NCBI GenBank assembly: GCA_044892525.1
Contig: CM097886.1
Coordinates: forward strand, 100,192,001 to 100,256,000
Reading direction: 5' to 3'
DNA length: 64,000 nt
DNA from: Schmidtea polychroa
Lineage: Eukaryota
Position numbers and translations under genes: made by a program. Positions 32,517 to 63,403 of the stretch are shown here, in pieces. The stretch's first letter is position 1. The number at the start of each line of letters is the position of its first letter. The notes beneath the pieces were generated by a model, which searched no databases, was not told where the DNA came from, and saw nothing but the letters and a program-made list of their open reading frames with translations.

Positions 32517-33059
32517 TAATCTGCACGAGTCAAACCCCAACAATATGTTAACAATATTGTTGGGCTAAAACGTGGAGTTTCGAAAACTGGAGCGAATAGA
32601 AAAGTAATCCTTGAAAAATAAACGAAATAAAATATAAATATAAAGTACCATCAAATTCGCGCTAATAAAGCAAAAAGGAACAATAAAATATCAATAAGAG
32701 AATAAGAATAAGTAAAACAAACTAAATAAAACCCAATAAACCCCTTGAGATTTAGAAATAAAGCGATTTAGGACCCAGCAGATGAAATAGAATAAAATAA
32801 GTAAAAAAGTGACAACAAATAAACGAGAAATTTAAGAAATAAATAAAAATAAAACTATCTTTAAGTCTAATTAAAACAAAAAATTATATTACAATAAAGT
32901 AGCAATAAATCCACAGGAAAAATAGGAGGAAAATAATAAAAATAAGAAAATAAATAAAATAATAATAAGAAATAAGTTAAGTCATTAAAATCTAATACAT
33001 TATAATAAAAAACATAAAAATAATAATAAATAGTAAAAATACAAACAAGTCGTGTCCTA

Positions 33060-33084
33060 ATTGGACGAAAAATAGTATATAAGG
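33060..33084 (+). promoter_or_regulatory. Candidate LTR promoter: reverse CCAAT box + TATA box (copy at 59697-59721)
   Basis: ATTGG-N11-TATATAAGG, with the same motif and spacing in the relic LTR at 13309-13333 (minus strand). Confidence 0.6.
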
Positions 33085-35501
33085 AACGGAAAATATCTGT
33101 AGAGTACCACTTTTAAAAAATATTCTACAGGTAAACTTTGGTTCGTTATATACTACCACTTTTAAAAAATATTCTACAGACTTGACAGATTTCGGAACCT
33201 TTAATTAGCCTACAGCGAACTAGTTCAGAGATTTCCAAACCAAACCGAGGAAGGAATATATAGAGGCCAAACTACAAATCCATTCGGGAAAAATTTTAAA
33301 TTCAACCGATTTAACTTCAGTTTTCGAAACTCAAGGTATGCCTCGACAGTTGTTTTATTTATGGTTATTAGTTAATTTCGTTAATTATCGTTAATTTCGT
33401 TAATTAAATATAATAAATCAATTTCATATAATAAATTTATTTAAATGAAAAGTTGCCTTTCTTCATGGTACCGGCGACTGTACCATCTGAGAACTCCCAG
33501 TATGATGTGGACGAGTTGGAATTGCACTGCAGTAGAGGACACCACCGTGGAAAGGTTGGTATGCATAAGAAATCACGAACATGCTGAAAAGAGAATGTGA
33601 TATTTGTAGAGAGTGATATTGTCATATTAGATATCCATCAAGGAGACGAGGAGGTTTCGGTTATGTAGGAGGAGCAACATCATACTCGGAGATCCAAATG
33701 ATATGGTCGCCGGGTAAATTTTATTTATGCATTTTCTATCATTCAGTTTGATTATTGTATTGTTGATTTGATTGCATGGAAACGAGTTGATTGGTCCCTC
33801 ATGACGGTGCAAGGAGGCGGCAGCAATGAATGCCTTCTTGGGTGTGTCGTGAGGGGTGAAGAAACTCAGTAGGTGGAACATCCAGTTAATAAATGACAGT
33901 TCCTTCATCAAGCGCGATCGTCTATAGAGCGTATCATCGGTTCATTGAGTTAAATCGAGATTTCCAGTAGTTGTAGAAATGATTTGAATTCCGAATGCAG
34001 ACAGTTCAGAGCGAGATAGGCAGTGACGTTCATTCAGATTCGGTAGTAATCCGCATAGCTAGGAGAAAAATTCCTTTTCGTGATATTCAGCCGGTCGATC
34101 GACGTAGTTAGGAAAGAGCAGTGTTGACCATGGATTGCAAGTAAATCCAACGATTTTTCGGTGACGCACTGCGTTTGCAAGGTTCTGTCTAATTGATGCC
34201 GTCATGACGTTAGCGGTTACATCCATTGTCGATGTACTCTTACGATTTAATTGTCGTCCGTGAGTCGCCAATGCCGGTGATAAAAAATCTCTCGCTGACA
34301 GGGAAGTAAACATCTTGCAGGGAAATTATCAAAATTCTTACTTCGAGCTCGCAGACAGTAGTTGCCAACGATAACGAAATCAGTTGATTTACATTAGCCA
34401 GCGTAGAGTTAGTCGACAGGAGATATCTGATAATGTCCTGGAGAAGGAGATAACATGTTAGTTTTTCTGGGAAAATGTCAAATGAATAAGCTGATAGTCA
34501 TTGATCTGAATTAATATCGTAAAAGGAAATTAGATGATAATGTTGAGCTTACCCAAGAATCTACGAAGTTGTCGCCCACTCAGATTGATTAATCTGATTT
34601 TCCGATTTACCTACGGCTGCTTATTTGAGGAATCGATTACGCAACCACTATTATTCCGACTTGAGCATGCACATACACACGCACCACAGTCAAGTCTACA
34701 TAGGGCAGTGTAAAAGTAAATCCACAATTTTTGGTGATGTAATAGCGGCACGATAATATGACTTTTCTAGAACAGCGAGATAATAGGGTGAAGTAAAGGA
34801 ATGGATTTCCCTTACACAACTCGATATATAATAATTTCTCATAACAACCTAAACCATCATTCGCGGCGATAGCCAACATACAGTTATAGATGCCACCAGG
34901 AGTAATGACACACTTACACATTCAGTCATAATGCACACTCACAAGTAAACGTTTTCCATGACGACGATTTCGACGCGTTATTTGAATTAATTAGATGTCG
35001 ATTTAGAGCAGAATTTTCAACTGATTACGTGATCAATTCCATAATTTTGAACGAGATAAAAACATAAATAATCTATTCCGTCGCCGTGAATTATTTCTCT
35101 GTAATTTTAGGTACGCCTACATCGACGGATTGCCATAATGATATCGGCAAATTTTTAAATAAATTATCCTAAGGGGAACACGGTTGAAGGGGATAAAGTA
35201 AAAGACGAGTTTTACCTGGGGATGGCCCCATCCGAAAGTAAACCCAAAGGGCGAGGTTTGTGTAGAAAGAATTTTTGGTGTACGAATCCCCGTTTCCTTT
35301 TCTTAAATTACACGAATCAGGTGAAGAGATTTGAATGTTTGCGACTGAATGACTGCGAATAGAGATGGATGAGGAAGTGTGTGGGTCATCGTTGGGTGGT
35401 ATGCTTGATAAACTCCAAAGCCACGCTCAAAAATTTGATTATTCTTTTTCTCACTGATAGAGGTTTTTCCGAGTAAATATAAACAATGATTGATTTTCTA
35501 G

Positions 35502-36263
35502 ATGGCTACATCGTCCAACAACGCCAACGAACTTCGCCCGTGTTTTTCTTGTGCGGACAAGAACGCGGATATCGCCCAACTGCATCTATATATCGGGGCT
35601 CTCAAAAAGAGAATTGATCTCTATGAAGGAACGTGGTTCTCCCCGCCACAAATGAAAGAGGAACGCAAGAAAATTCTCCGATTAGAGCATTGCAGGGACA
35701 GCCTGCTAGAGGAAAGCCGTTGCCAGCGGCTCACCATCAAAGCGCAATCAGAAGCCCTCCATAAGGTGTATACGGAGGCAGAATTGGCTAAGCGGGTGCG
35801 AGAATTTCCCGTTCTGGATGGGACGAATGTTTTTCCCCTTCACCACCAGTCTCCTACATCTTCCAGCTCGCACTGCCAGGGGCACGGCTCACAACTGCCG
35901 CCCATTCCAGCCCCAGTGTTGTCAAGTCACCAGCCAAAGACAGGTGGACCTACCGATCCCATCGTAGCTCAAATCTTGGTAGCACCAATCGGTACCACGA
36001 ACACCGAAAAACCCCCGACTAACCGCAAACGGAAACGGCCAACTCGAGCCGAGAAGAACCAAAAACGCCGAGATGCGATGACAGCACTCGAGACGTCCTT
36101 ATCGGCGGCGAAATCAAAAATCCAAGAGATAACGTCCTCCCATTCAATCCCCTCAAAGGAAGTCTTCCGCATTGTTCCAGCGGAGGGCATCAAGTACATT
36201 GTAGATAGCCGATTACCGGTCGACATAGATGAGATACTGGCCGATGGAGATAACTTTGTTTAA
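35502..36263 (+). CDS. LTR-encoded 253-aa protein: CxxC + coiled coil, Pro/Ser-rich linker, basic NLS-like patch
   Basis: Intact ORF with identical translation in both LTRs. Preceded by TTTTCTAG and followed by AATAAA. Confidence 0.7.
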   Translation: MATSSNNANELRPCFSCADKNADIAQLHLYIGALKKRIDLYEGTWFSPPQMKEERKKILRLEHCRDSLLEESRCQRLTIKAQSEALHKVYTEAELAKRVREFPVLDGTNVFPLHHQSPTSSSSHCQGHGSQLPPIPAPVLSSHQPKTGGPTDPIVAQILVAPIGTTNTEKPPTNRKRKRPTRAEKNQKRRDAMTALETSLSAAKSKIQEITSSHSIPSKEVFRIVPAEGIKYIVDSRLPVDIDEILADGDNFV

Positions 36264-36393
36264 TGTGATGTACAATTGAGCTTGATTTCCTCTTCATTGA
36301 GTTGTAAATTATCTTGTGAATGTTGCTAATGTTATATCTTTTTGACTGCTGTTGATCTGTTAGTGGTAATGATATTTTTATCGTTTCAGTGTC

Positions 36394-36399
36394 AATAAA
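36394..36399 (+). terminator. Candidate polyadenylation signal AATAAA in the LTR
   Basis: AATAAA followed by a T/G-rich tract, about 400 bp before the LTR end. Confidence 0.5.
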
Positions 36400-36809
36400 A
36401 TTTTCTGTTTGATTTCAGTTTTGTCGAGTTTTCATATATTTGTTTGTGCAATTTGAGTAGATGAGATAATGCTGCGGAATGAAGCTAATTAAAGTTGAAA
36501 GTCGTTCCTTTGGACCAGGAGCAGACCAAGTGACACGCATGTATGTGGGTAAGTCCTTCTAGGGCACCGTAGGACCCGAACCGAGAAAGGGTTAGGAGTA
36601 GTCCTAAGGCAGGGGCTCACCTGCTAACCTTTTCCGACCCGTGTGAGCAGCACCAACATGGAACATCACCATGGGCTCATATGTGGGAATATGCAATCAA
36701 TCATTTGGAGTATGTGTAGAAAATGTATAGCGGAGCCATGATGCTTGATAGGTGTGATGGAAAGGCATGTATAATTTTCTTTCTTCTCCACATACGCCAA
36801 CATGATTTT

Positions 36810-36827
36810 TGGGGGCTCAGCCGGGAT
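36810..36827 (+). other. Primer-binding site, tRNA-Pro type
   Basis: TGGGGGCTCAGCCGGGAT matches the canonical tRNA-Pro PBS TGGGGGCTCGTCCGGGAT at 16/18, 7 nt downstream of the 5' LTR. Confidence 0.85.
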
Positions 36828-37262
36828 GTATATTGATTTGTTTGATTGTCTAATTTTGTGTTATGATGTGTTAGATTAACAATTTAATTAATTATGATAA
36901 AAACGGAATCGGGGCTGAAACGAATTATAGTGCAATAAAATGATACGAACTGTCTGAGTTTGAAATAGAGCATGTGGTGAATGAAACGAACCTAAATGAG
37001 TTGGAATGAATGTGATGAAGTATGATGAGAAAAGAAAACGGGAATTGGTTATTGTGGTTAATTTTAACTGGTTAAAATAAGAAGGGGGACGAAAGAAAGT
37101 AAGTGATTAAAGCAAAAAGATGAAAGGGGAATTTCAAAGATCGAATAAAATACAAAAGTTAAAACACTAAAGCATAAAAGTCAACGAATATTAAATACAA
37201 ACATAATAATATTAATTTTAATACCAGCAGGAACAAAATAATAACAACCCATTCATTTAGAT

Positions 37263-37742
37263 ATGTCAGAAGCTAGACAACATCTACAACAGCTAAGCCG
37301 GTTCGTCGAAATAGAAAATGATTCAATAAAAACATTAAGGGAAAAACTGAAACAAATAGAACTGCTAGAACGACAAAGCCACAACGCACCGCTGATATCC
37401 AAACAAAACTTTCTAACCGACAGATTAGGATCAACAAATACCGATACCGACTTGTCTATTCATTACCAATGGTTTCAGCAACGTCTCGACGACCCCGCTC
37501 TGAACATCGAATATGTGAGGATACGCGAACAAGTCAAAACTTTGTCTCAGCGGATACGAACATCAATAGTAGAGAAAGCAGCGGCCTTGAGAACTTGTAA
37601 CATTTGCAAGATGCGACCTGTCAAAATTCTGATTCTACCTTGTGGGCACCTTAGCCATTGTGACGAATGCGCCGCCAGTTTAATCCGTTGTTCTATGTGC
37701 ACATGTGTAATAAAAGAGAAGCACACAATCTACTTCAGTTAG
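37263..37742 (+). CDS. 159-aa coiled-coil protein with C-terminal IAP/MDM2-type C3HC4 RING (putative E3 ligase)
   Basis: CNICKMRPVKILILPCGHLSHCDECAASLIRCSMC...IYFS-stop. No BIR domain seen. Confidence 0.85.
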   Translation: MSEARQHLQQLSRFVEIENDSIKTLREKLKQIELLERQSHNAPLISKQNFLTDRLGSTNTDTDLSIHYQWFQQRLDDPALNIEYVRIREQVKTLSQRIRTSIVEKAAALRTCNICKMRPVKILILPCGHLSHCDECAASLIRCSMCTCVIKEKHTIYFS

Positions 37743-38323
37743 GTACGCGATCGTCGCTCGGTGAAGGAAATTGGATGATTGACAATTAGATTAAACATTT
37801 TGATATTTTTGTTCTGATTTAATTCGGTAATGTTTTATAATGATAGCATATATTATCTGTAATGTGGAGTAAATAACTAATAAATCCTTTTTGTGTATTC
37901 ATTTCATTATACGAAGTTATAAATTGATTTGTGTTGTTATAATTTTCACCATGAAGAAAGGGCATTTTAAAAATTTAAATTGATTATTTAAAGTGGAACT
38001 AGTCCCATCATAGTGTTAAAGGGGGAATAAACCGAGCCACCTTCGGGAGGTACGATATTGGAACCATTTGGGAAGGGACAACCGATCACCCCGAGTAAGA
38101 GATGTAAGGCGAGGTACCATCGCGAATATTGAAAAGTTTCTGCGGTATGGCTGATCACCATACCAATGTAGAAATGGATCAATGCGATCGTTTTGCGTTT
38201 TGAGCAAGGGGGGAAAGGGGAAACCTGCCAAAGCGGTACAGATTAAGTCGACAAATAAAAGTAAAAATAGGAAGACGACAGTATAGAATAAAGACAGAGA
38301 AGGAACGGAAGCATGCAGAGTTT

Positions 38324-39005
38324 AGAGATATTAAGGCCGAGCTGTTGAAAAGTCCAGCCGGTCAGGGAAATTGAAACTGAGCTGTGAAAAGTCCAGCCAG
38401 TCGGAGATATTAAGGCCGAGCTGTTGAAAAGTCCAGCCGGTCAGAAAAATTAAAACTGAGCTGTGAAAAGTCCAGCCAGTCAGAGATATTAAGGCCGAGC
38501 TGTTGAAAAGTCCAGCCGGTCAGGGAAATTGAAACTGAGCTGTGAAAAGTCCAGCCAGTCGGAGATATTAAGGCCGAGCTGTTGAAAAGTCCAGCCGGTC
38601 AGGGAAATTGAAACTGAGCTGTGAAAAGTCCAGCCAGTCAGAGATATTAAGGCCGAGCTGTTGAAAAGTCCAGCCGGTCAGGGAAATTGAAACTGAGCTG
38701 TGAAAAGTCCAGCCAGCCGGAGATATTAAGATCGAGTTGTTGAATAGTCCAACCGGTCAGGAGAAGAAGATTGAGCTGTCGAGAAGTCCAGCCGGTCAGG
38801 AAAAATTAAAACTGAGCTGTGAAAAGTCCAGCCAGTTCGGAGATGAAGAAGATTGAGCTGTTGAATAGTGCCAGCCAGTCGTAAGGCCGAGCTGTTGAAA
38901 AGTCCAGCCGGTCAAGAAAAATTAAAACTGAGCTGTGAAAAGTCCAGCCAGTTCGGAGATGAAGAAGATTGAGCTGTTGAAAAGTGCCAGCCAGTCGTAA
39001 AGGCC
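38324..39005. repeat. Tandem array of alternating 40/39-bp subunits (79-bp dimer), about 17 subunits, degenerating at the 3' end
   Basis: Core GAGCTGT(T)GAAAAGTCCAGCC in every subunit. Confidence 0.95.
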
Positions 39006-40229: not shown

Positions 40230-42398
40230 ATGAATGTAGCAAAAACCGACGAATATAAAGAAAAATTTAGAGGCGAACCGTTCAACGGGAATGCGAACAA
40301 GTTGGCAACGTTCATAACAAATTTTGAAGTCTATATCGATGTGTGTGGATGGACATCAGAAGCAATTAGCAAACGGATGCCGTTGTTTTTATGTGATAGC
40401 GCACTCGAAGTGTATCTAGAAGCAAAAGAAAGAAATACGAAATTAGACAATTGGGAAAACATCAAAACATTTTTGAGAAAAACATTCGGAGCCAGCAAAC
40501 CGATAAATCAAGCGTTAGGTGAACTGGCAAGTAGAAAACAAAGAGCAAACGAGTCAATTACGTTATACGCAAGTGAATTGCGAAGATTGGCAAAGAAGGC
40601 CATGAACGGAAACTTGCCGGAGGAAAATTTAATTGGTTACTTCATAGAAGGACTGCGCCGAGAAGAGGTAAGGGCCTCGGTGGGATGTCAAATGTGTAAA
40701 ACACTAGAAGAAGCTATAGATTGGGCCACAAGATGCGAACTACACCTCCCGGCACAAATGAATGTCATGCAAGAGGAGGGAAGAATCGCAACAGCAACGG
40801 TGAAAACGGAAAATGGAGATAACAATAATCATGAACCAAAGATGAATCAGTTTATACCAGGTGCGCATCAAATTTTCAAACCACCACAAGGACGATCAAA
40901 CGGGAATAACAGTGAACGCAACAACTCGAACAATGGGAACAACTTTAATAATCGACGAAATATGAACGATAACAAACAATGCCGAACATGCGGTAAACCA
41001 GGACATTGGGATAGAGATTGTTACCGAAACGCAAATTGCAATAGGTGTGGACGACGAGGACACACGGAAAATATATGCCAATCGAGAGGATGTTTTAACT
41101 GCGGGCAACCAGGTCATATCTCAAGAGACTGTCGAGAAAGGAGCCAACAGCAACGACCACCACAGCGAAATAATAACTATGCACCAAATCCGCAACGACA
41201 AAGTAATCCTAGTGAGGGAAAGCAAATGAATGTGATGCAAGAAATTTCACAAATGAAGCAGATGATGCAACAAATGATGAGACCGAGACAAGAGCAAGTA
41301 CCACAACAAACCCAGAATATACGCATGATGAGAAGCACCGAGAATCTTAACAATTATGAAGTGCAACAACATGCACAAGAATGGCAAAGATTACAAGCTG
41401 AAGAAGAGAGGATAAAAAGAGAGCGAATTCAGCAGCGACAAGAACAACCACTACGAATAAATATGATGAGGATGGTAAAGGAGATAAAGGAGCAATATTG
41501 TTACAACTATGGTAAAAATCCAAGAGTTGTACCTACGAGCGAACCAGAGAAACCGAAGGAAACAATTACAGCAGCAAAAAAGGAAAATTCAACAACACCG
41601 CTAAAAGGAAATCAGAGAATTCAGAAAATATTTTGGAAAAAGATAAAAGATAAAATCGAAAGAGAAAATGAGAAAACAAAAACAGAAGCAGAAGCAGAGA
41701 ATAACGAAAATGAAAAACAGATTAATCATCTAAGTCATGATATGATACGAGAATTAGACTCAGAGGAGCTAACGATATTCGAGAACAAAAAGTTAAAGAA
41801 AGTACCAAGAATGAGAAATTTACGAATTAATATGATGAGGACAACAAAGACGGTGTTGTCAACAGATGACGATGAGGATTATGTGAGTAGCCTTGGTGGA
41901 GAAATGTTACAGTTAAATGAAAATATCGACCAACTAAGAGAGAAGATCGGAACAGAGGAAGAAGAGAGTGAAAGCGACGTAACAAGCGAAAGCGAAGACG
42001 AGAATATCGAAATGAAATTGAGAAAAGAAAGAGAAGAATCGATAAAACAAGTAAAGGAAATACTTCCAGTGGTGGTAAGAAACCAGGAATTCATTGACAT
42101 CATACCATACCGACGCTTCATACAAAAGATAATGAAACTAGAAAGAAACGAAAAAGACCTAATACCAAACGAGGAAAAAGTGATAATAAAGAAGTATATG
42201 GAAAAAATGAAACAAGCGGAGACAACACGGTATGTAATAAAAATCGGAACGAGTAAAGGGCTCGAGAGAATATGGATAAAAAGCAGTCACAGACGACCTT
42301 TTCGATTGGATAAGAGAACATTTGGGCAGCTCGAGAAAGAAAGAATACCTGTATCAATATCAAGGAGAACAAATCAAACCAGACATGCACCTAATTGA
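40230..42398 (+). CDS. gag: Gag: capsid-like region, three CCHC zinc knuckles, Q/N-rich and acidic extensions; the frame is open from 39867
   Basis: PFNGNANKLATFITNFE...GW; RKQRANESITLYASELRRLA; CRTCGKPGHWDRDC, CNRCGRRGHTENIC, CFNCGQPGHISRDC. Confidence 0.93.
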   Translation: MNVAKTDEYKEKFRGEPFNGNANKLATFITNFEVYIDVCGWTSEAISKRMPLFLCDSALEVYLEAKERNTKLDNWENIKTFLRKTFGASKPINQALGELASRKQRANESITLYASELRRLAKKAMNGNLPEENLIGYFIEGLRREEVRASVGCQMCKTLEEAIDWATRCELHLPAQMNVMQEEGRIATATVKTENGDNNNHEPKMNQFIPGAHQIFKPPQGRSNGNNSERNNSNNGNNFNNRRNMNDNKQCRTCGKPGHWDRDCYRNANCNRCGRRGHTENICQSRGCFNCGQPGHISRDCRERSQQQRPPQRNNNYAPNPQRQSNPSEGKQMNVMQEISQMKQMMQQMMRPRQEQVPQQTQNIRMMRSTENLNNYEVQQHAQEWQRLQAEEERIKRERIQQRQEQPLRINMMRMVKEIKEQYCYNYGKNPRVVPTSEPEKPKETITAAKKENSTTPLKGNQRIQKIFWKKIKDKIERENEKTKTEAEAENNENEKQINHLSHDMIRELDSEELTIFENKKLKKVPRMRNLRINMMRTTKTVLSTDDDEDYVSSLGGEMLQLNENIDQLREKIGTEEEESESDVTSESEDENIEMKLRKEREESIKQVKEILPVVVRNQEFIDIIPYRRFIQKIMKLERNEKDLIPNEEKVIIKKYMEKMKQAETTRYVIKIGTSKGLERIWIKSSHRRPFRLDKRTFGQLEKERIPVSISRRTNQTRHAPN

Positions 42399-54267: not shown

Positions 54268-54627
54268 ATGGAGCGAATAGGCGAGGAAGTAAATCACAGT
54301 ACAACAACCGAGGAGATGTGGAAACAACAATGTGCAATGTTAACTCAAGTGATTTCGAATTTACAGGAACAAGGACTCGCTGTACAAAGAAGCTTAGTCG
54401 AAAGTTTAAATAAAGGCTTCAGTTATGTAAGAATAATCGAAGACCAACGAATAAAAATAGAACAAATGCAGCGAGAGATAGACCGAATATCACGATACAG
54501 CCAGGTGCAAGAAGAGGAGTTAATAAGAATCGCGGAAGAGATGGAGCGAGAGGAGATAGAAGACTGGTCGGAATGGTTAACCAGCAGGGAAGAGGGCGGA
54601 CAAGAGGCCGACTCTTCCAGCCAATAA
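54268..54627 (+). CDS. Small acidic coiled-coil protein (about 119 aa from ATG 54268)
   Basis: Intact ORF with E/Q/R-rich heptad pattern, bounded by AT-rich spacers. Confidence 0.6.
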   Translation: MERIGEEVNHSTTTEEMWKQQCAMLTQVISNLQEQGLAVQRSLVESLNKGFSYVRIIEDQRIKIEQMQREIDRISRYSQVQEEELIRIAEEMEREEIEDWSEWLTSREEGGQEADSSSQ

Positions 54628-54716
54628 ACATAACCTAAAATAACAATGTAAATAACTGTAAATAAAAATACGAAACTGTACCAGTAACGAATATATGTAT
54701 ATATATAATTATAGAA

Positions 54717-56105
54717 ATGGATAAGCGACAACGAGAAGAACTCAAAGAAATTGTTGAACAAGTCAGAAAGTCCACCACAATTCGAATACACAACCATGTA
54801 ACGTGTGGAATATGCAAGAGCTTATTAAGAGAACCTCACCAAACCAGATGTGGATGCAGAATGTGCAGAGAATGTGTAGAGGAGATAATAAAGAAGGGAC
54901 CACAATGGTGCCCGGTATGCAAAGAAACAATGATAACAAGTTTGGGAGATACAAACGAAGATAAAGCAGCTGTAAAAGATATGTTGAATGCAAACCTTGG
55001 ATGCAAAAACACCCCATGTAATTGGCGAGGAGTGATATGGGAAGTGAGGCAACATTTGGAGCAATGTGAATATAAAATCAGTCAATGCAAACGTTGCCAA
55101 GAAGAGATTAAAGTCAATGAAGAAGCAGAACATCAAAGTCGATGCGAAGAAAGACTGGAGAAATGTGAGTATTGCGGAGAAACCGACACCTGGAAAAAAC
55201 TAATCAGTCAACATCACAACATACAAGAGGAGAAAGTGTGCGCAGAATTCAGAGGAGAATGCCCCAACAAATGCGATAAACCCGGAGTAATAAAACTCGC
55301 TCAACATCTGAAAGAATGTGAAAGGAAAAAGATAAGGTGTGTGTTAGGAAAATGGGGAAATCAGAAACAATTACACCGAGGGGAATTACCCCAACACCTA
55401 GCAGAAAACGTATCAACACACGCGGAAATATGGTCAACGGTATTACAAGAAAACGAAAGGAAAACCGAAAACTTAGAAAGAGAAATAGTCTCGCTAAAAG
55501 CGTTGGTAAAAGAACTATTGGAAGAAAAAGAAGCATTTGAAGAGGCGAGAACAAGTACAAAGATACAGACAGATCTAGTAGAAACTAGCAACATTATGGT
55601 AAAAGAACTACATCAAAAAGTAAGCGAATTAAACCTCAACGAATTAATACCTACGGCCCCATACATATGGAAAATAACGGGAGTAAAAGAGAAGATGCAG
55701 AGAGCGAGAAATGGAAAGGATACGACCTTACTAAGTCCAGCATTCTACTCATGGAAAAACGGGTATAAAATGAAAATGAAAGCATACCCCAATGGGGATG
55801 GAAGTGCATACGGAACGCATTTCTCAGTATTCTTCTTGATGTGCAAAGGGCCACACGACGAGTTAATAGAATGGCCATTCAAAGCAAAAATAGACCTCGC
55901 AATGATGAACTATCAAAATATACATGAACAGAGTTTCCATACAGCGGGAAACCTCGTATGTTACCAAAGGCCCTTGGAAGAAGAAGGACCAGCAACTGGA
56001 GCACCGAATTTCATCCTACAGCGGAAAGTAGAAGACATGACGAAAAACGACACTATATACATAAAAATAGCGGTGAGGCGAGACGGGAAGAGTAGGACTG
56101 AGTAG
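54717..56105 (+). CDS. TRAF: Full-length intronless TRAF (RING, TRAF zinc fingers, coiled coil, MATH/TRAF-C domain), 462 aa
   Basis: CGICKSLLREPHQTRCGCRMCREC...CPVC; HLEQC, HQSRC, HLKEC fingers; YIWKI, LSPAFY, GYKMKMKAYPNGDG, THFSVFF, DELIEWPF, NDTIYIKIAV. Confidence 0.95.
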   Translation: MDKRQREELKEIVEQVRKSTTIRIHNHVTCGICKSLLREPHQTRCGCRMCRECVEEIIKKGPQWCPVCKETMITSLGDTNEDKAAVKDMLNANLGCKNTPCNWRGVIWEVRQHLEQCEYKISQCKRCQEEIKVNEEAEHQSRCEERLEKCEYCGETDTWKKLISQHHNIQEEKVCAEFRGECPNKCDKPGVIKLAQHLKECERKKIRCVLGKWGNQKQLHRGELPQHLAENVSTHAEIWSTVLQENERKTENLEREIVSLKALVKELLEEKEAFEEARTSTKIQTDLVETSNIMVKELHQKVSELNLNELIPTAPYIWKITGVKEKMQRARNGKDTTLLSPAFYSWKNGYKMKMKAYPNGDGSAYGTHFSVFFLMCKGPHDELIEWPFKAKIDLAMMNYQNIHEQSFHTAGNLVCYQRPLEEEGPATGAPNFILQRKVEDMTKNDTIYIKIAVRRDGKSRTE

Positions 56106-56324: not shown

Positions 56325-57362
56325 ATGACACAAGAAGGAACTGAAGCCCCAAACCACGAAACCAAAGTCAATAAAATCCATAAGGGAAAATGGGTCAAAG
56401 TAATGTTACAATTGACGAACCAGACCCGCAACCACCTCGAAGAGGCCAGGGAATACGAGAATAACAAATATCAGTGGTTAGTAAACAATTTAAGAGCCGA
56501 AGCAGAAGCATGCAAAAGAGCCTCTAAGTGGGCATCATTGGAAAACACTCGCCAAGAAGCGCACAGCCACTATTTAAAACAGTTAGTTCAGGAAGCACGG
56601 AAACGATTGACGGACGAAAACACAAAACGAGAAGCAGAAAAACAAAAGGAAGGAAGGAAAATGAATCACCTATTGGCAGAAGCCCGAAACTGGAAGCGGC
56701 AGAACAAAGAGATGAAAAAAGAAATGAAAGAATTGCCTATGAGATTAGAATACGAAAGCGAACAAGGCAAATGGGAGGAAAATCTGGTCATAAGAGAAGA
56801 ACTGAAACGGCTCAGAAAGATTGCGGCCCGAAGCCAAACATGGCAGACCAAAGCCATGGAATTTGAAAGACATCTAGCCATGAAAATCTCCATAAGGGAG
56901 CACGAGAATGCCGCAATGGAAGAACTGATACTTCAACAGTCAGGACGACTCGTGGAACTGGTAAATAAGGTCGCCGAACTAGAACGAGATGTCAACGGAT
57001 ACCAAGGAGCTCTGGAGCAGAGAAATATGGTACTGGCGGGGAAAAACAAAAAGTTAGAAAACGAAAGGAAAATGTATAACGAAAATCTCAAAAATCTGGA
57101 GATAGAGATCAAGAAATGGGAAAACGGCGAAAAAGCGGAAGAGCTAGAAAAACAGATAGAGGTAAGAGACGATGAAACCAGGTATCTAACATACCTGTTG
57201 GACGAGGAACTTAACGTGTCAAGAGCACTAAGAGACGAAGTGCAAGAACTTAGAGCGCAGATTCCCCGGTACTACATACCATTTGATCCCATCGCACTCC
57301 AATTACAAACGTCAGTAGAAAGCGATGAGGGATATGTAGGCCAGGAAGAGACCTTTGTATAA
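56325..57362 (+). CDS. 345-aa coiled-coil protein of unknown function
   Basis: Long intact ORF, E/K/L-rich heptads. Confidence 0.7.
   Translation: MTQEGTEAPNHETKVNKIHKGKWVKVMLQLTNQTRNHLEEAREYENNKYQWLVNNLRAEAEACKRASKWASLENTRQEAHSHYLKQLVQEARKRLTDENTKREAEKQKEGRKMNHLLAEARNWKRQNKEMKKEMKELPMRLEYESEQGKWEENLVIREELKRLRKIAARSQTWQTKAMEFERHLAMKISIREHENAAMEELILQQSGRLVELVNKVAELERDVNGYQGALEQRNMVLAGKNKKLENERKMYNENLKNLEIEIKKWENGEKAEELEKQIEVRDDETRYLTYLLDEELNVSRALRDEVQELRAQIPRYYIPFDPIALQLQTSVESDEGYVGQEETFV

Positions 57363-57378: not shown

Positions 57379-57422
<44 letters not shown>
57379..57422. repeat. A30 tract followed by (TA)n
   Basis: Direct reading of the sequence. Confidence 0.95.
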
Positions 57423-57570
57423 AAAATCGGGACCTGTATCCCAACCAAAAAAATTAATGGTACGGTAAAAGTATGAAAGGGACTGTAACCCTGATTATAA
57501 AATAACATATAAATGTATAAGTATAAGCCGCACTGTAGCGCAATTATTAATTATGTATATATTATAGAAA

Positions 57571-58272
57571 ATGAACGCTGAGAACGGACAATCTATCATA
57601 ACACCTATAATCGAATTAGAAGAGGGGGAAATTGAAGTTGATGAAGTGGAGAGGAAGAAAACTATCAAGGAAGAATTACAAGAAGAGAGACAGGAAAACG
57701 AAAGATTAGTAGAAAGGTGGAGAGATAATCGAAAAATGATCAAAGTATTGAAAAGAGAATATAGCTTGTTAGAAGGAGTAAAGAAAGAAGTAGAGGAAGA
57801 AAACGAATGGCTTCACGAGCAAAGAAAGCGAGGGAGAAATTGGGAAAAGATCGCGGAAGAATTATGGCAGGAGATGGCCAGTCGAAAGGCCGACGAAGTG
57901 ATTAGTGACTATTGGAAAACCGAGGCACGGAAACACCAAGAAAGCCTGAAAGAGTTACAACTCCAACTACACCAAAAACAGAAGGAATGCGAGATAATGA
58001 GACGAATGAACAACAAATACCAGGAAATAGACAACGAAGAAGACGGGGAAAGGGAAAATGATTTTCTACAGATAATGAACCATAAAAACCTCGAAAGAGC
58101 AACACAAGAAATAAAAGCACTAAAAGAAAAAATAATAACCCTAAAGCAACAGTTAGACGAAAGAGACAAACAATTAAAAGTACTACCCGAATTGAGAAAA
58201 CGAGTAATAAAAGCAGAAACGAGAGTGATGAGAACATCCGAGAAAACCCGTAAAAAGAAAACCCGGCAATAA
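57571..58272 (+). CDS. 233-aa coiled-coil protein of unknown function
   Basis: Intact ORF, E/K/R-rich heptads, basic C-terminus. Confidence 0.7.
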   Translation: MNAENGQSIITPIIELEEGEIEVDEVERKKTIKEELQEERQENERLVERWRDNRKMIKVLKREYSLLEGVKKEVEEENEWLHEQRKRGRNWEKIAEELWQEMASRKADEVISDYWKTEARKHQESLKELQLQLHQKQKECEIMRRMNNKYQEIDNEEDGERENDFLQIMNHKNLERATQEIKALKEKIITLKQQLDERDKQLKVLPELRKRVIKAETRVMRTSEKTRKKKTRQ

Positions 58273-58327
58273 TTTAAGATGAATGATCAATGTAAATAAT
58301 TGTAAATAAAAATTTTCGTATAGTAGT

Positions 58328-58963
58328 ATGTGGTTCGGAGCAACCCTGGTGACAATAATGATGATAGCGATAAACGGAATACCCATGTGGCAGCCAATCC
58401 CAACACTATGGGAGAATCCCGAGAAACAGCAAAACCCGTTAACCAAACTGAAAAGCGAAAGAAAGCTCTCCAACAACATCCCGAAACAATGCTGGAACAA
58501 AGCCGTCTGGAAAAAACTCCAAATGCAACTCCACCTACAAACCCAAAAAATCGAACAGCTCGAAATTCTCTTACAAGAACAAACTACCCAACAATCCTTG
58601 AAAGAAATCATCATGAAGAAGGAAGTAAAAGAAAGCCAAGTCCTACTCTATACTACCATCAGTGAAACCCTTATCATCTGCGCACTAGTCATCTGGAAAG
58701 CGTATGATATTCATCGAACATGGAGAAGAAACCAGTCACTATCCGAGAAACACGAAAGAAAGAACCCACGACCGAAAAATAAACATAAACGAGCAGTACA
58801 TTTTCAACAACCAAACCCACCTGACCAAATGCAACAAAATCTATCTCCTGACCAAATGCCTGTTACAATCCAGCTCCCCACGATAACAACTTCAACCAGC
58901 CATCCGACCCAGAATTCAACCAACCAAGACAGTAATAACATTCCGAACCTTGAGATCATGTGA
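58328..58963 (+). CDS. 211-aa putative type I membrane protein
   Basis: Signal-like MWFGATLVTIMMIAING, TM-like VLLYTTISETLIICALVIW, then a basic stop-transfer stretch and a P/Q/T-rich tail. Confidence 0.6.
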   Translation: MWFGATLVTIMMIAINGIPMWQPIPTLWENPEKQQNPLTKLKSERKLSNNIPKQCWNKAVWKKLQMQLHLQTQKIEQLEILLQEQTTQQSLKEIIMKKEVKESQVLLYTTISETLIICALVIWKAYDIHRTWRRNQSLSEKHERKNPRPKNKHKRAVHFQQPNPPDQMQQNLSPDQMPVTIQLPTITTSTSHPTQNSTNQDSNNIPNLEIM

Positions 58964-59160
58964 CATCGACCATTCATAAACTTTGTGTGTATAAATCCGG
59001 TCACCTAAAGTGGCCACTGCTTGCTTATATTTGTCCTTTTATCTGTTTAATTAAAGTATTATTTAGTTATTTTAATTTTATGTTTGTGTGAATGATGACC
59101 GTGAAATTAGTTGTTATGCCGAAAAAAGGTATGATTTAAACGTATGATATTATGTGAATT

Positions 59161-59194
59161 GCGGGGCGCAATTTTAACGGGCCCCGGAGTGATT
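59161..59194 (+). other. Atypical polypurine-tract region before the 3' LTR
   Basis: GCGGGGCGCAATTTTAACGGGCCCCGGAGTGATT is G-rich but not purely purine; position only. Confidence 0.3.
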
Positions 59195-62100
59195 TGTTGG
59201 GCTAAAACGTGGAGTTTCGAAAACTGGAGCGAATAGAAAAGTAATCCTTGAAAAATAAACGAAATAAAATATAAATATAAAGTACCATCAAATTCGCGCT
59301 AATAAAGCAAAAAGGAACAATAAAATATCAATAAGAGAATAAGAATAAGTAAAACAAACTAAATAAAACCCAATAAACCCCTTGAGATTTAGAAATAAAG
59401 CGATTTAGGACCCAGCAGATGAAATAGAATAAAATAAGTAAAAAAGTGACAACAAATAAACGAGAAATTTAAGAAATAAATAAAAATAAAACTATCTTTA
59501 AGTCTAATTAAAACAAAAAATTATATTACAATAAAGTAGCAATAAATCCACAGGAAAAATAGGAGGAAAATAATAAAAATAAGAAAATAAATAAAATAAT
59601 AATAAGAAATAAGTTAAGTCATTAAAATCTAATACATTATAATAAAAAACATAAAAATAATAATAAATAGTAAAAATACAAACAAGTCGTGTCCTGATTG
59701 GACGAAAAATAGTATATAAGGAACGGAAAATATCTGTAGAGTACCACTTTTAAAAAATATTCTACAGGTAAACTTTGGTTCGTTATATACTACCACTTTT
59801 AAAAAATATTCTACAGACTTGACAGATTTCGGAACCTTTAATTAGCCTACAGCGAACTAGTTCAGAGATTTCCAAACCAAACCGAGGAAGGAATATATAG
59901 AGGCCAAACTACAAATCCATTCGGGAAAAATTTTAAATTCAACCGATTTAACTTCAGTTTTCGAAACTCAAGGTATGCCTCGACAGTTGTTTTATTTATG
60001 GTTATTAGTTAATTTCGTTAATTATTATAAATATAATAAATCAATTTCATATAATAAATTTATTTAAATGAAAAGTTGCCTTTCTTCATGGTACCGGCGA
60101 CTGTACCATCTGAGAACTCCCAGTATGATGTGGACGAGTTGGAATTGCACTGCAGTAGAGGACACCACCGTGGAAAGGTTGGTATGCATAAGAAATCACG
60201 AACATGCTGAAAAGAGAATGTGATATTTGTAGAGAGTGATATTGTCATATTAGATATCCATCAAGGAGACGAGGAGGTTTCGGTTATGTAGGAGGAGCAA
60301 CATCATACTCGGAGATCCAAATGATATGGTCGCCGGGTAAATTTTATTTATGCATTTTCTATCATTCAGTTTGATTATTGTATTGTTGATTTGATTGCAT
60401 GGAAACGAGTTGATTGGTCCCTCATGACGGTGCAAGGAGGCGGCAGCAATGAATGCCTTCTTGGGTGTGTCGTGAGGGGTGAAGAAACTCAGTAGGTGGA
60501 ACATCCAGTTAATAAATGACAGTTCCTTCATCAAGCGCGATCGTCTATAGAGCGTATCATCGGTTCATTGAGTTAAATCGAGATTTCCAGTAGTTGTAGA
60601 AATGATTTGAATTCCGAATGCAGACAGTTCAGAGCGAGATAGGCAGTGACGTTCATTCAGATTCGGTAGTAATCCGCATAGCTAGGAGAAAAATTCCTTT
60701 TCGTGATATTCAGCCGGTCGATCGACGTAGTTAGGAAAGAGCAGTGTTGACCATGGATTGCAAGTAAATCCAACGATTTTTCGGTGACGCACTGCGTTTG
60801 CAAGGTTCTGTCTAATTGATGCCGTCATGACGTTAGCGGTTACATCCATTGTCGATGTACTCTTACGATTTAATTGTCGTCCGTGAGTCGCCAATGCCGG
60901 TGATAAAAAATCTCTCGCTGACAGGGAAGTAAACATCTTGCAGGGAAATTATCAAAATTCTTACTTCGAGCTCGCAGACAGTAGTTGCCAACGATAACGA
61001 AATCAGTTGATTTACATTAGCCAGCGTAGAGTTAGTCGACAGGAGATATCTGATAATGTCCTGGAGAAGGAGATAACATGTTAGTTTTTCTGGGAAAATG
61101 TCAAATGAATAAGCTGATAGTCATTGATCTGAATTAATATCGTAAAAGGAAATTAGATGATAATGTTGAGCTTACCCAAGAATCTACGAAGTTGTCGCCC
61201 ACTCAGATTGATTAATCTGATTTTCCGATTTACCTACGGCTGCTTATTTGAGGAATCGATTACGCAACCACTATTATTCCGACTTGAGCATGCACATACA
61301 CACGCACCACAGTCAAGTCTACATAGGGCAGTGTAAAAGTAAATCCACAATTTTTGGTGATGTAATAGCGGCACGATAATATGACTTTTCTAGAACAGCG
61401 AGATAATAGGGTGAAGTAAAGGAATGGATTTCCCCTACACAACTCGATATATAATAATTTCTCATAACAACCTAAACCATCATTCGCGGCGATAGCCAAC
61501 ATACAGTTATAGATGCCACCATTCAGTCATAATGCACACTCACAAGTAAACGTTTTCCATGACGACGATTTCGACGCGTTATTTGAATTAATTAGATGTC
61601 GATTTAGAGCAGAATTTTCAACTGATTACGTGATCAATTCCATAATTTTGAACGAGATAAAAACATAAATAATCTATTCCGTCGCCGTGAATTATTTCTC
61701 TGTAATTTTAGGTACGCCTACATCGACGGATTGCCATAATGATATCGGCAAATTTTTAAATAAATTATCCTAAGGGGAACACGGTTGAAGGGGATAAAGT
61801 AAAAGACGAGTTTTACCTGGGGATGGCCCCATCCGAAAGTAAACCCAAAGGGCGAGGTTTGTGTAGAAAGAATTTTTGGTGTACGAATCCCCGTTTCCTT
61901 TTCTTAAATTACACGAATCAGGTGAAGAGATTTGAATGTTTGCGACTGAATGACTGCGAATAGAGATGGATGAGGAAGTGTGTGGGTCATCGTTGGGTGG
62001 TATGCTTGATAAACTCCAAAGCCACGCTCAAAAATTTGATTATTCTTTTTCTCACTGATAGAGGTTTTTCCGAGTAAATATAAACAATGATTGATTTTCT

Positions 62101-63403
62101 AGATGGCTACATCGTCCAACAACGCCAACGAACTTCGCCCGTGTTTTTCTTGCGCGGACAAGAACGCGGATATCGCCCAACTGCATCTATATATCGGGGC
62201 TCTCAAAAAGAGAATTGATCTCTATGAAGGAACGTGGTTCTCCCCGCCACAAATGAAAGAGGAACGCAAGAAAATTCTCCGATTAGAGCATTGCAGGGAC
62301 AGCCTGCTAGAGGAAAGCCGTTGCCAGCGGCTCACCATCAAAGCGCAATCAGAAGCCCTCCATAAGGTGTATACGGAGGCAGAATTGGCTAAGCGGGTGC
62401 GAGAATTTCCCGTTCTGGATGGGACGAATGTTTTTCCCCTTCACCACCAGTCTCCTACATCTTCCAGCTCGCACTGCCAGGGGCACGGCTCACAACTGCC
62501 GCCCATTCCAGCCCCAGTGTTGTCAAGTCACCAGCCAAAGACAGGTGGACCTACCGATCCCATCGTAGCTCAAATCTTGGTAGCACCAATCGGTACCACG
62601 AACACCGAAAAACCCCCGACTAACCGCAAACGGAAACGGCCAACTCGAGCCGAGAAGAACCAAAAACGCCGAGATGCGATGACAGCACTCGAGACGTCCT
62701 TATCGGCGGCGAAATCAAAAATCCAAGAGATAACGTCCTCCCATTCAATCCCCTCAAAGGAAGTCTTCCGCATTGTTCCAGCGGAGGGCATCAAGTACAT
62801 TGTAGATAGCCGATTACCGGTCGACATAGATGAGATACTGGCCGATGGAGATAACTTTGTTTAATGTGATGTACAATTGAGCTTGATTTCCTCTTCATTG
62901 AGTTGTAAATTATCTTGTGAATGTTGCTAATGTTATATCTTTTTGACTGCTGTTGATCTGTTAGTGGTAATGATATTTTTATCGTTTCAGTGTCAATAAA
63001 ATTTTCTGTTTGATTTCAGTTTTGTCGAGTTTTCATATATTTGTTTGTGCAATTTGAGTAGATGAGATAATGCTGCGGAATGAAGCTAATTAAAGTTGAA
63101 AGTCGTTCCTTTGGACCAGGAGCAGACCAAGTGACACGCATGTATGTGGGTAAGTCCTTCTAGGGCACCGTAGGACCCGAACCGAGAAAGGGTTAGGAGT
63201 AGTCCTAAGGCAGGGGCTCACCTGCTAACCTTTTCCGACCCGTGTGAGCAGCACCAACATGGAACATCACCATGGGCTCATATGTGGGAATATGCAATCA
63301 ATCATTTGGAGTATGTGTAGAAAATGTATAGCGGAGCCATGATGCTTGATAGGTGTGATGGAAAGGCATGTATAATTTTCTTTCTTCTCCACATACGCCA
63401 ACA
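59195..63403 (+). repeat. 3' LTR (4209 bp)
   Basis: Near-identical to the 5' LTR; followed by the ATAT TSD. Confidence 0.97.
62103..62864 (+). CDS. 3' LTR copy of the 253-aa LTR-encoded protein
   Basis: Identical translation to 35502-36263. Confidence 0.7.
   Translation: MATSSNNANELRPCFSCADKNADIAQLHLYIGALKKRIDLYEGTWFSPPQMKEERKKILRLEHCRDSLLEESRCQRLTIKAQSEALHKVYTEAELAKRVREFPVLDGTNVFPLHHQSPTSSSSHCQGHGSQLPPIPAPVLSSHQPKTGGPTDPIVAQILVAPIGTTNTEKPPTNRKRKRPTRAEKNQKRRDAMTALETSLSAAKSKIQEITSSHSIPSKEVFRIVPAEGIKYIVDSRLPVDIDEILADGDNFV

What the first reader, a model, noticed from the sequence alone, without database searches (positions are those of the whole stretch)
32558..63403. Complete 30.8-kb giant Gypsy element that looks like a complex enveloped endogenous virus
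Seen: 4.2-kb LTRs with inverted TGTTGG/CCAACA ends, ATAT TSD, tRNA-Pro PBS, an unbroken 11.8-kb ORF and seven further intact ORFs. The LTRs differ by only two indels and a few SNPs, so the insertion is recent. Established: typical Gypsy elements are about 5-12 kb; giant ones are known (plant Ogre, planarian Burro). Inference: the gene content (Env before Pol plus many accessory genes) does not match any architecture I can name, so it may be a new lineage of infectious giant retroelements.
Basis: partly seen in the sequence, partly recalled or inferred. Interest (0 to 1): 0.95.

Follow-up and report, generated by a model that had tools for sequence, protein, structure and literature searches.

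The report
Intact giant Burro-type flatworm retroelement
This is a real, young, apparently unbroken 30.8-kb Ty3/gypsy retrovirus-like element with an envelope gene inside its polyprotein and host-derived cell-death and signalling genes, but this design is already published for planarian "Burro" elements, so it is not a new lineage.

Summary
Two LTRs of 4,245 and 4,209 nt differ by 3 substitutions and two indel sites. They have TGTTGG/CCAACA ends and an ATAT target duplication, and a TGG-starting primer site follows the 5' LTR. There is a 3,939-codon open frame plus seven other long ORFs.

The gene order is IAP-type RING ORF, gag (3 CCHC knuckles), then the giant ORF: unknown N-terminus, weak Bcl-2-like signal, Env, PR, RT, RNase H, IN, ankyrin repeats. 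After it come a full TRAF gene and three or four unknown ORFs.

Env is a chuvirus-like class III (gB-like) fusion glycoprotein with its own signal-like segment and membrane anchor (Pfam E 4e-71; model pLDDT 85; Foldseek E 3e-41).

The "new lineage" reading fails. Arkhipova & Yushenova 2019 describe planarian Burro/GYPSM1 elements of over 30 kb, with env in frame between BCL2 and PR, plus TRAF, ankyrin and IAP-related motifs. An eLife 2026 survey reports GAG-ENV-POL, gB-type elements in Platyhelminthes.

This copy differs in detail from the two Burro versions described in text: TRAF is a separate downstream gene, and gag is in another frame. I file it as a member of a known kind. I could identify neither the host nor the exact subfamily.

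The parts
32554..32557 (.). 5' target-site duplication ATAT
32558..36802 (+). 5' LTR, 4,245 nt, TGTTGG...CCAACA. The first ~500 nt are 23% G+C and the rest about 40-50%.
35502..36263 (+). 253-codon ORF inside the LTR. The protein is identical in both LTRs, and the one substitution inside it is synonymous. No family or structure match.
36810..36827 (+). Primer-binding-site-like 18-mer starting TGG. tRNA isotype not verified.
37263..37742 (+). 159-aa ORF with an IAP-type C-terminal RING (cIAP1/XIAP RING, E 1e-9). No BIR domain found.
38325..38996 (+). Tandem array, 79-bp unit, about 8.5 copies, in the leader
40230..42398 (+). gag, 722 aa: Retrotrans_gag domain plus three CCHC knuckles. It overlaps the giant ORF in a different frame.
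42280..54099 (+). Giant open frame, 3,939 codons (first ATG at 42385), with no stop or frame change inside
44701..44895 (+). Weak Bcl-2-family match (E 0.14), ending 45 residues before Env. Relative P0182 has the same spacing (E 0.055). Inconclusive.
45022..45090 (+). Signal-peptide-like hydrophobic segment preceded by basic residues, at the start of Env
45028..46851 (+). Env: Monjiviricetes_fusion (PF24664, E 4e-71), a class III gB-like fold closest to chuvirus-like glycoproteins. All 10 near-invariant Cys/Gly columns are kept.
46762..46845 (+). Transmembrane anchor of Env. A second hydrophobic stretch follows about 10 residues later.
47419..47694 (+). Aspartic protease (RVP), DTGA motif present
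48358..48834 (+). Reverse transcriptase (RVT_1), YIDD motif present
49021..49410 (+). RNase H
49732..50301 (+). Integrase: H2C2 zinc domain plus rve core
51169..52314 (+). Ankyrin repeats fused after integrase. About 590 unassigned residues with two hydrophobic segments follow.
54268..54627 (+). 119-aa ORF. Its length is within the chance range, so it is an uncertain gene.
54645..54669 (+). 25-nt junction motif holding poly(A)-signal-like AATAAA, copy 1
54717..56105 (+). Complete TRAF-like gene, 462 aa: RING, TRAF zinc fingers, coiled coil, TRAF-C/MATH (TRAF2/3 E 3e-28; TRAF6 RING-ZnF E 4e-15)
56325..57362 (+). 345-aa E/K/L-rich ORF, no match
57379..57408 (+). A30 tract 17 nt after the stop of the 345-aa ORF
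57571..58272 (+). 233-aa E/K-rich ORF. The only match is a weak coiled-coil hit (PAWR, E 0.0045).
58289..58313 (+). 25-nt junction motif, copy 2
58328..58963 (+). 211-aa ORF with two hydrophobic segments, a small membrane protein candidate
59195..63403 (+). 3' LTR, 4,209 nt. It carries the second copy of the LTR ORF at 62103-62864.
63404..63407 (.). 3' target-site duplication ATAT

Best explanation
The region is one recently integrated, structurally intact copy of a Burro-type giant Ty3/gypsy (Metaviridae) element, most likely in a dugesiid planarian genome. Shown: a complete LTR-PBS-gag-PR-RT-RH-IN-LTR retroelement with a 4-bp target duplication. A chuvirus-like class III fusion glycoprotein lies in frame upstream of the protease, bracketed by a signal-like segment and a membrane anchor. 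There are also ankyrin repeats fused after integrase, a stand-alone IAP-type RING gene in the leader, a complete TRAF gene, and further ORFs downstream of pol. Inferred mechanism: the 5' LTR drives a genomic RNA. Gag is made from its own frame, and the giant ORF is reached by a frame change or by re-initiation at the ATG lying 11 nt before the gag stop. While the polyprotein is translated, the internal signal segment threads the Env ectodomain into the ER and the anchor stops transfer. The N-terminal part and PR-RT-RH-IN-ANK therefore stay cytosolic, and signal peptidase plus the element's protease release the pieces. Reverse transcription is primed by a tRNA at the PBS, and integrase makes the ATAT duplication. 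The RING, Bcl-2-like, TRAF and ankyrin modules, which are intronless and highly diverged from cellular relatives, probably act on host ubiquitin, NF-kB-type and cell-death signalling so that producing cells survive. The 3' genes are probably expressed from processed sub-genomic RNAs at repeated junctions, each a poly(A)-signal-like motif followed by an AG acceptor.
For: Anatomy. Env family, fold and conserved residues. The signal-like segment and anchor are conserved in every polyprotein-embedded relative examined. The nearest relatives, P0001-P0007, share the env-PR-RT-RH-IN layout at 42-46% identity over PR-IN and 52-60% over the RT-RH core. Ankyrin repeats move between positions among them. 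Relatives P0002, P0169, P0180 and P0182 have gag fused to env, with weak ubiquitin and Bcl-2 signals in the order published for Burro. Literature match for size, three CCHC knuckles, BCL2-env-PR order, ankyrin, TRAF, tandem repeats and A+T-rich host: PMC6431247, PMC11410931, PMC13524379. Accessory genes. Junction motif. Uniform A-rich strand bias and roughly 38-40% G+C from 38 to 58 kb against roughly 30% flanks, with no foreign transposon domain inside.
Against: No Burro sequence was available, so family identity rests on architecture alone. The host was not identified: none of the element's proteins is in the protein collection, and the best relatives are only 42-46% identical. The Bcl-2 signal is below significance and the single-sequence model was useless (pLDDT 46). 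BIR, dUTPase-like, SUMO-like and in-polyprotein MATH motifs reported for Burro1 were not found. TRAF is a separate downstream gene and gag is in another frame, unlike Burro1's single 4,873-aa ORF1. No polypurine tract abuts the 3' LTR, and the tRNA isotype is unverified. All expression and topology steps are inference with no RNA or protein data.
Confidence: 0.8

Rival explanations
1. One reading: it is a previously unknown lineage of giant, infectious retroelements with an architecture not seen before.
For: No close relative exists in 5.8 billion clustered proteins; the best is 46% identical. The N-terminal 917 residues of the giant ORF, the LTR ORF and three 3' ORFs match nothing. The layout differs in detail from the two Burro versions described in accessible text.
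Against: The defining traits are all published for Burro and for flatworm GAG-ENV-POL elements: size over 30 kb, env in frame before PR, TRAF/ankyrin/IAP-related/Bcl-2-like modules, tandem repeats, and three CCHC knuckles. The lack of close database hits is expected if planarian repeat proteins are simply absent from the collection.
Confidence: 0.07
2. It is a Burro-type element that multiplies only inside cells. Env is retained but does not serve transfer between cells; for example it is a recently inactivated or otherwise-used passenger.
For: Nothing here shows particles or transfer. The signal-like segment is less hydrophobic than in the relatives (1.5 against 2.0-2.8). Only one N-glycosylation sequon lies in the ectodomain.
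Against: Env is uninterrupted over about 610 residues and keeps all near-invariant Cys/Gly positions. It folds confidently as a class III fusogen and keeps its anchor. The same arrangement is conserved across relatives only 30-47% identical, which argues for long-term selection on Env.
Confidence: 0.2
3. The 30.8 kb is an assembly artefact or a composite, such as two elements joined through their LTRs or a nested insertion supplying the 3' accessory block.
For: An N run ends 41 nt upstream of the 5' LTR. Repeats of 30 kb with 4.2-kb near-identical LTRs are hard to assemble. An A30 tract lies inside the 3' block.
Against: Target duplications match on both sides. There is one LTR pair only and no N inside. 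Base composition and strand bias are even across the interior. No second RT, integrase or transposase lies inside, and no internal long repeats apart from the 79-bp array. The downstream ORFs are all on the same strand and are linked by a repeated junction motif.
Confidence: 0.05

Closest known systems
Burro / GYPSM1 giant Ty3/gypsy elements of dugesiid planarians (Jurka 2007; Grohme et al. 2018; Arkhipova & Yushenova 2019, PMC6431247)
   Same: Over 30 kb with multi-kb LTRs; an internal tandem-repeat array; gag with Retrotrans_gag and three CCHC knuckles; env in frame just after a BCL2-like region and before PR; ankyrin repeats after IN; TRAF/MATH and IAP-related modules; accessory functions that can be either separate ORFs or polyprotein domains; an A+T-rich host.
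   Different: Here gag is a separate ORF in another frame, whereas Burro1 has one 4,873-aa ORF1. TRAF is a complete stand-alone gene downstream of pol, whereas it sits inside ORF1 in Burro1 and upstream in the D. tigrina element. Only an IAP-type RING was found, with no BIR. No dUTPase-like or SUMO-like domain was detected. Sequence identity to any Burro consensus could not be measured.
GAG-ENV-POL 'errantiviruses' with HSV/gB-type Env in Platyhelminthes, Nematoda and Bryozoa (PMC13524379)
   Same: Ty3/gypsy pol, a class III gB-like Env, and env placed between gag and pol.
   Different: The accessible text of that survey does not discuss accessory genes or Burro. It searched for separate ENV and POL ORFs, whereas here Env is part of one 3,939-codon frame.
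Unnamed metagenome-assembled relatives P0001-P0007, P0168-P0182 (loci L001-L003, L007)
   Same: Env-PR-RT-RH-IN in one ORF; a signal-like segment and an anchor around Env; ankyrin module; some have gag fused in front with weak ubiquitin and Bcl-2 signals. These are the closest pol (42-46%) and env (29-47%) relatives.
   Different: Much smaller where the ends are visible: L002 is about 15.3 kb with LTRs of about 335 nt. They have no TRAF or RING genes and no similarity to the N-terminal 917 residues or the 3' ORFs. Their primer site differs. Hosts are unknown.
Chuvirus (Jingchuvirales) glycoproteins and their capture by mosquito BEL/Pao elements (Dezordi et al. 2020, PMC7642597)
   Same: The same glycoprotein family. 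Tacheng Tick Virus 4 G and chu-related virus G are the best named sequence and structure matches.
   Different: Only 18-27% identity. The mosquito case is in a different retroelement superfamily.
Drosophila gypsy-type errantiviruses
   Same: Ty3/gypsy elements with an envelope gene.
   Different: Their Env is the baculovirus F / paramyxovirus F type (class I), is encoded after pol, and is made from a spliced mRNA. They are about 7 kb and have no host-derived accessory genes. Basis: PMC13524379 and general knowledge.
Complex retroviruses and foamy-like fish ERVs with accessory ORFs; MMTV sag in the LTR; plant Ogre
   Same: Accessory ORFs 3' of pol; an ORF inside the LTR (analogy to MMTV sag, from general knowledge); very long LTRs (Ogre).
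   Different: Unrelated lineages. Their accessory genes are not TRAF, IAP-RING or ankyrin modules. Ogre lacks env.

Membership tests
Ty3/gypsy (Metaviridae) LTR retroelement | Pol domain order PR-RT-RNase H-IN | tested here: met
   Pfam matches in that order, with DTGA, YIDD and HHCC motifs present
Ty3/gypsy (Metaviridae) LTR retroelement | Gag with capsid-like domain and CCHC knuckles | tested here: met
   Retrotrans_gag E 2e-10; three CCHC knuckles
Ty3/gypsy (Metaviridae) LTR retroelement | LTRs with TG...CA ends and a 4-6 bp target duplication | tested here: met
Ty3/gypsy (Metaviridae) LTR retroelement | tRNA primer-binding site after the 5' LTR and polypurine tract before the 3' LTR | tested here: inconclusive
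   A TGG-starting 18-mer lies 7 nt after the LTR. The tRNA isotype is untested. No purine run abuts the 3' LTR.
Burro (planarian giant gypsy) | Total length over 30 kb with a roughly 25-kb interior | tested here: met
   30,846 bp in total, with a 22,392-bp interior; definition
Burro (planarian giant gypsy) | env in frame in the polyprotein, between a BCL2-like region and PR | tested here: met
   Env is in frame before PR. The Bcl-2 part is only E 0.14, at the expected position.
Burro (planarian giant gypsy) | Apoptosis/ubiquitin-type accessory modules (MATH/TRAF, ankyrin, IAP-related) | tested here: met
   TRAF gene, ankyrin repeats and IAP-type RING. BIR not found.
Burro (planarian giant gypsy) | Host is a dugesiid planarian | not testable with these tools
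   The flanks are about 70% A+T, as reported for Schmidtea. No host gene lies in the window and no database identity was found.
Burro (planarian giant gypsy) | Sequence identity to GYPSM1/Burro-1 to -4 consensus | not testable with these tools
   Repbase/Dfam are not available, and Grohme et al. 2018 is not held
Class III viral fusion glycoprotein (gB / rhabdovirus G / chuvirus G) | Family profile match and fold | tested here: met
   PF24664 E 4e-71. Model pLDDT 85. gB E 4e-14. Chu-related G E 3e-41, TM 0.6.
Class III viral fusion glycoprotein (gB / rhabdovirus G / chuvirus G) | Type I membrane protein: N-terminal signal and C-terminal anchor | tested here: met
   Hydropathy only. Cleavage was not tested.
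Errantivirus in the strict Drosophila sense | F-type (class I) env encoded after pol | tested here: not met
   Env is class III and lies before pol
TRAF family | RING, TRAF zinc fingers, coiled coil and TRAF-C/MATH | tested here: met
IAP family | At least one BIR domain | tested here: not met
   Only the IAP-type RING is present in the 159-aa ORF. No BIR-sized ORF lies in the leader.

The most novel reading that the evidence does not exclude
It is an uncatalogued, currently active Burro subfamily with two unusual traits. First, Env is delivered to the ER from inside a 3,900-residue polyprotein by an internal signal segment, a topology like flavivirus polyproteins and conserved across the whole env-in-pol clade. 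Second, the 3' accessory genes form an operon-like block. Its repeated junctions (poly(A)-signal motif followed by an AG acceptor) would be resolved as flatworm operons are, possibly by spliced-leader trans-splicing. The A30 tract would then be a fossil of a captured processed mRNA.
Probability: 0.15. Interest if true: 0.7.

Novelty: new member of a known kind. Interest (0 to 1): 0.35.

Why it matters
Burro elements make up a large share of planarian genomes, hinder their assembly, and are silenced by PIWI proteins in a model of regeneration. A copy with every frame open and LTRs about 0.07% diverged is a useful reference for three questions: how a retroelement can carry about 22 kb of interior, how an envelope protein embedded in a polyprotein reaches the membrane, and which host pathways (TRAF, IAP-type ubiquitin ligase, Bcl-2-like, ankyrin) such elements target. 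This report adds some detail to the published descriptions. Env is shown by fold to be class III and chuvirus-like, whereas the 2019 review gave gypsy Env as its best match. The signal-plus-anchor bracket is conserved across the clade. The 3' genes share a junction motif. None of this changes the classification.

Tried and rejected
- **Host identification failed.** Exact look-ups of ten window proteins found nothing. The TRAF search gave only unnamed relatives at 23-29% identity. The flanking hAT transposase has a best hit of 63% and named hits in an aphid and Hydra at about 53%, which is not diagnostic. Rfam found nothing.
- **tRNA-Pro claim untested.** A metagenome scan for a tRNA with a matching acceptor/T-arm returned three loci without tRNAs. 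The relatives do not share this primer site.
- **Burro sequences unavailable.** Grohme et al. 2018 is not held. The supplements of two papers are not held.
- **Env by sequence against PDB:** no hit. It was resolved by fold instead.
- **N-terminal 917 residues:** no PDB or Pfam match, and no similarity to relatives.
- **Bcl-2-like region:** the single-sequence model had pLDDT 46, so I did not search with it.
- **IMG/VR scan with the pol region:** nothing.
- **The 79-bp tandem period shared with L003:** no sequence similarity, so I treat it as coincidence.
- **The o233 match to PAWR:** I take it as coiled-coil bias.
- **Nested or second copy in the window:** only a 50-nt match to the LTR elsewhere.


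Full report
**Observation**

The window holds two direct repeats, 32558-36802 and 59195-63403, of 4,245 and 4,209 nt. They differ by three substitutions, a 14-nt length difference inside a 9-bp microsatellite, and one 22-nt indel. They begin TGTTGG and end CCAACA, and ATAT lies immediately outside both ends. An 18-nt site starting with TGG lies 7 nt inside the 5' LTR boundary, at 36810-36827. The unit is 30,846 bp. Its interior is about 38-40% G+C with a strong A excess on the + strand, against about 30% G+C in the flanks.

Three caveats apply. The tRNA-Pro assignment could not be tested. No polypurine tract abuts the 3' LTR. An N run ends 41 nt upstream of the element.

**Gene content**

On the + strand, in order:
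- **LTR ORF:** 253 codons inside each LTR. The two proteins are identical, and the one substitution inside is synonymous. Nothing matches it.
- **RING ORF:** 159 aa. Its C-terminus is an IAP-type RING (cIAP1/XIAP, E 1e-9). No BIR domain is present.
- **Tandem array:** a 79-bp unit repeated in the leader.
- **gag:** 722 aa with a Retrotrans_gag domain and three CCHC knuckles.
- **Giant ORF:** an open frame of 3,939 codons.
- **Possible 119-aa ORF:** its length is within the chance range.
- **TRAF gene:** complete, with RING, zinc fingers, coiled coil and TRAF-C (TRAF2/3 E 3e-28).
- **Two E/K-rich ORFs:** 345 and 233 aa.
- **Membrane-protein candidate:** 211 aa with two hydrophobic segments.

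The four long 3' ORFs are longer than any ORF in 500 composition-matched simulations. I saw no stop or frame change inside any recognised domain. The only irregularity is that gag and the giant ORF stand in different frames and overlap by about 120 nt. From one copy I cannot tell whether this is a programmed arrangement or a single break.

**The giant ORF**

Pfam places the domains as follows, in residues of the open frame:

| Domain | Residues |
|---|---|
| Monjiviricetes_fusion (Env) | about 917-1524 (E 4e-71) |
| Protease | 1714-1805 |
| Reverse transcriptase | 2027-2185 |
| RNase H | 2248-2377 |
| Integrase | 2485-2674 |
| Ankyrin repeats | 2964-3345 |

The catalytic motifs DTGA, YIDD and HHCC are present. 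A sub-threshold Bcl-2 match (E 0.14) ends 45 residues before Env. Relative P0182 shows the same weak match (E 0.055) with the same spacing. The first roughly 800 residues and the last roughly 590 residues match nothing.

**Env**

- **Sequence relatives.** A full HMMER scan of 1.84 billion representatives found 1,025 relatives. The best roughly twenty (29-47% identity) are embedded in polyproteins of 1.2-3.2 thousand residues. After them come hundreds of free-standing proteins of 620-710 residues at 22-27% identity. Among the latter are the glycoprotein of Tacheng Tick Virus 4 (a chuvirus, from general knowledge) and a beetle endogenous copy.
- **Structure.** A model built on a 44-sequence alignment has pLDDT 85. 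It matches post-fusion herpesvirus gB in the PDB (E 4e-14, probability 1.0). In BFVD it matches chu-related virus glycoproteins best (E 3e-41, TM 0.6). Env is therefore a class III fusogen of the chuvirus-like family.
- **Membrane topology.** Env keeps every near-invariant Cys/Gly column. It starts with a basic-then-hydrophobic signal-like segment and ends in a strong membrane anchor. The same bracket, a hydrophobic segment about 20 residues before the ectodomain and an anchor right after it, is present in every polyprotein-embedded relative whose sequence covers those positions.

**Relatives**

The nearest proteins, P0001-P0007, come from metagenome assemblies, and one is mis-filed under a bacterial MAG. 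They are 42-46% identical over PR-IN and 52-60% over the RT-RH core. They share env-PR-RT-RH-IN in one ORF. In a rough neighbour-joining tree the window element is sister to them. A C. elegans pol protein (UniProt Q17329) and the chromodomain-bearing fungal and plant pol proteins lie further out.

Where ends are visible the relatives are small: L002 is about 15.3 kb with LTRs of about 335 nt. Ankyrin repeats occur before PR in P0001, after IN here, and as a separate ORF in L003. Several relatives have gag fused in front of env, with weak ubiquitin-like and Bcl-2 signals between them.

**Comparison with the literature**

- **Arkhipova & Yushenova 2019** (PMC6431247) describe planarian Burro elements (Grohme et al. 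2018; GYPSM1 of Jurka 2007). They are over 30 kb with an interior of up to 25 kb, carry tandem repeats, and have a gag with three CCHC knuckles in S. mediterranea. Their motifs include MATH_TRAF_C, BIR, BCL2-like and ankyrin. Env is in frame between BCL2 and PR and hits mononegavirus fusion glycoproteins. Accessory functions appear either as ORFs or as polyprotein domains. The authors already propose that Burro elements are integrated proviruses.
- **Ivankovic et al. 2024** (PMC11410931) note more than 70% A+T and Burro elements over 30 kb in Schmidtea.
- **The eLife 2026 survey** (PMC13524379) reports that env-bearing Ty3/gypsy elements of Platyhelminthes, Nematoda and Bryozoa carry gB-type Env in the order GAG-ENV-POL.

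This copy is not the Burro1 described in that text, which has a single 4,873-aa ORF1 with MATH inside. Nor is it the D. tigrina element, which has two knuckles and MATH upstream. It may be Burro-2, -3 or -4, or an uncatalogued member; I could not test this.

**Likely mechanism**

Shown: every part needed for LTR-retroelement replication is present and open, and the insertion is very young, with 3 substitutions in 4.2 kb of LTR.

Inferred:
- Gag is translated first. The giant ORF is reached by a frame change, or by re-initiation at an ATG 11 nt before the gag stop.
- The internal signal segment inserts the Env ectodomain into the ER and the anchor stops transfer. The upstream part and PR-RT-RH-IN-ANK therefore stay cytosolic.
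- Signal peptidase and the element's protease separate the products.
- The RING, TRAF, ankyrin and possible Bcl-2 modules resemble the host-derived death and signalling regulators carried by large DNA viruses. They probably keep producing cells alive or blunt signalling.
- A 25-nt motif containing poly(A)-signal-like AATAAA occurs exactly twice, at two junctions between 3' ORFs, with none expected by chance. In each case an AG lies just before the next ATG. An A30 tract follows the 345-aa ORF. Flatworms use spliced-leader trans-splicing and operons (PMC8629364 and PMC12582326). Operon-like processing of the 3' block is therefore a testable idea, held with low confidence.

**Limits**

The host was not identified. 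No Burro sequence could be obtained. I have no expression data.

I also report a slip.

**Verdict**

The feature is real and well described. It is an intact giant Burro-type GAG-ENV-POL Ty3/gypsy element. It is a member of a known kind, not a new lineage, and its interest is moderate to low.

Noticed in passing
window 54645-54669 and 58289-58313: An exact 25-nt motif (one Y position), holding two AATAAA-like cores, sits at two junctions between 3' accessory ORFs. None is expected by chance. Within about 15-50 nt an AG lies just before the next ATG.
   Followed up: partly
window 57379-57420: An A30 tract followed by (TA)n lies 17 nt after the stop of the 345-aa ORF. It may be a fossil poly(A) tail of a captured or processed mRNA.
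   Followed up: no
window 32537-32551 and 63398-63412: The 15 nt formed by the last 6 nt of the 3' LTR plus the first 9 nt of the 3' flank also occur just upstream of the 5' target duplication. This could be a target-site repeat, microhomology or chance.
   Followed up: partly
window 21965-24234 and 26347-28616: A 2,270-nt inverted repeat, 99% complementary and 2.1 kb apart. Each arm carries a BED/Spin-doc zinc-finger ORF and a hAT dimerisation-domain ORF. It is probably a rearranged hAT transposon.
   Followed up: partly
window 29814-31571 (-): A 585-aa ZMYM1-like hAT transposase ORF (DUF4371), shorter than its relatives of about 840 aa. The best relatives are 63% (unnamed), an aphid at 54% and Hydra at 53%, a patchy spread across animal phyla.
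   Followed up: partly
window 14800-20600: Short ORFs on both strands with RVT_1, DUF7047 and CCHC matches: remains of another, decayed retroelement.
   Followed up: no
window 32381-32516 and 5535-5807: Two N runs, one only 41 nt upstream of the 5' LTR. Left as they are.
   Followed up: no
L002 1-6000 and L003 17000-24900: Metagenome contigs carrying the closest relatives also carry bacterial-type genes (ABC transporter, MacB, luciferase-like, Mnh). One end of L002 is 66% G+C. These may be chimeric contigs. P0007 is filed as a Flavobacteriaceae MAG protein, probably through contamination.
   Followed up: no
L003 1559-1938: The relative has a tandem array of period 79 upstream of gag, the same period as the window's array at 38325-38996, but without sequence similarity.
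   Followed up: yes
window 35502-36263 and 62103-62864: The LTR ORF has a TATAAA 24 nt upstream, and an AATAAA follows about 130 nt after its stop. If it lies in R it would sit at both ends of the genomic RNA. The situation recalls the sag ORF in the MMTV LTR (general knowledge).
   Followed up: no
protein P0013: A more distant gypsy polyprotein carries PF24664 and Rhabdo_glycop matches, apparently after pol. This suggests class III glycoproteins joined Ty3/gypsy elements in more than one position.
   Followed up: no
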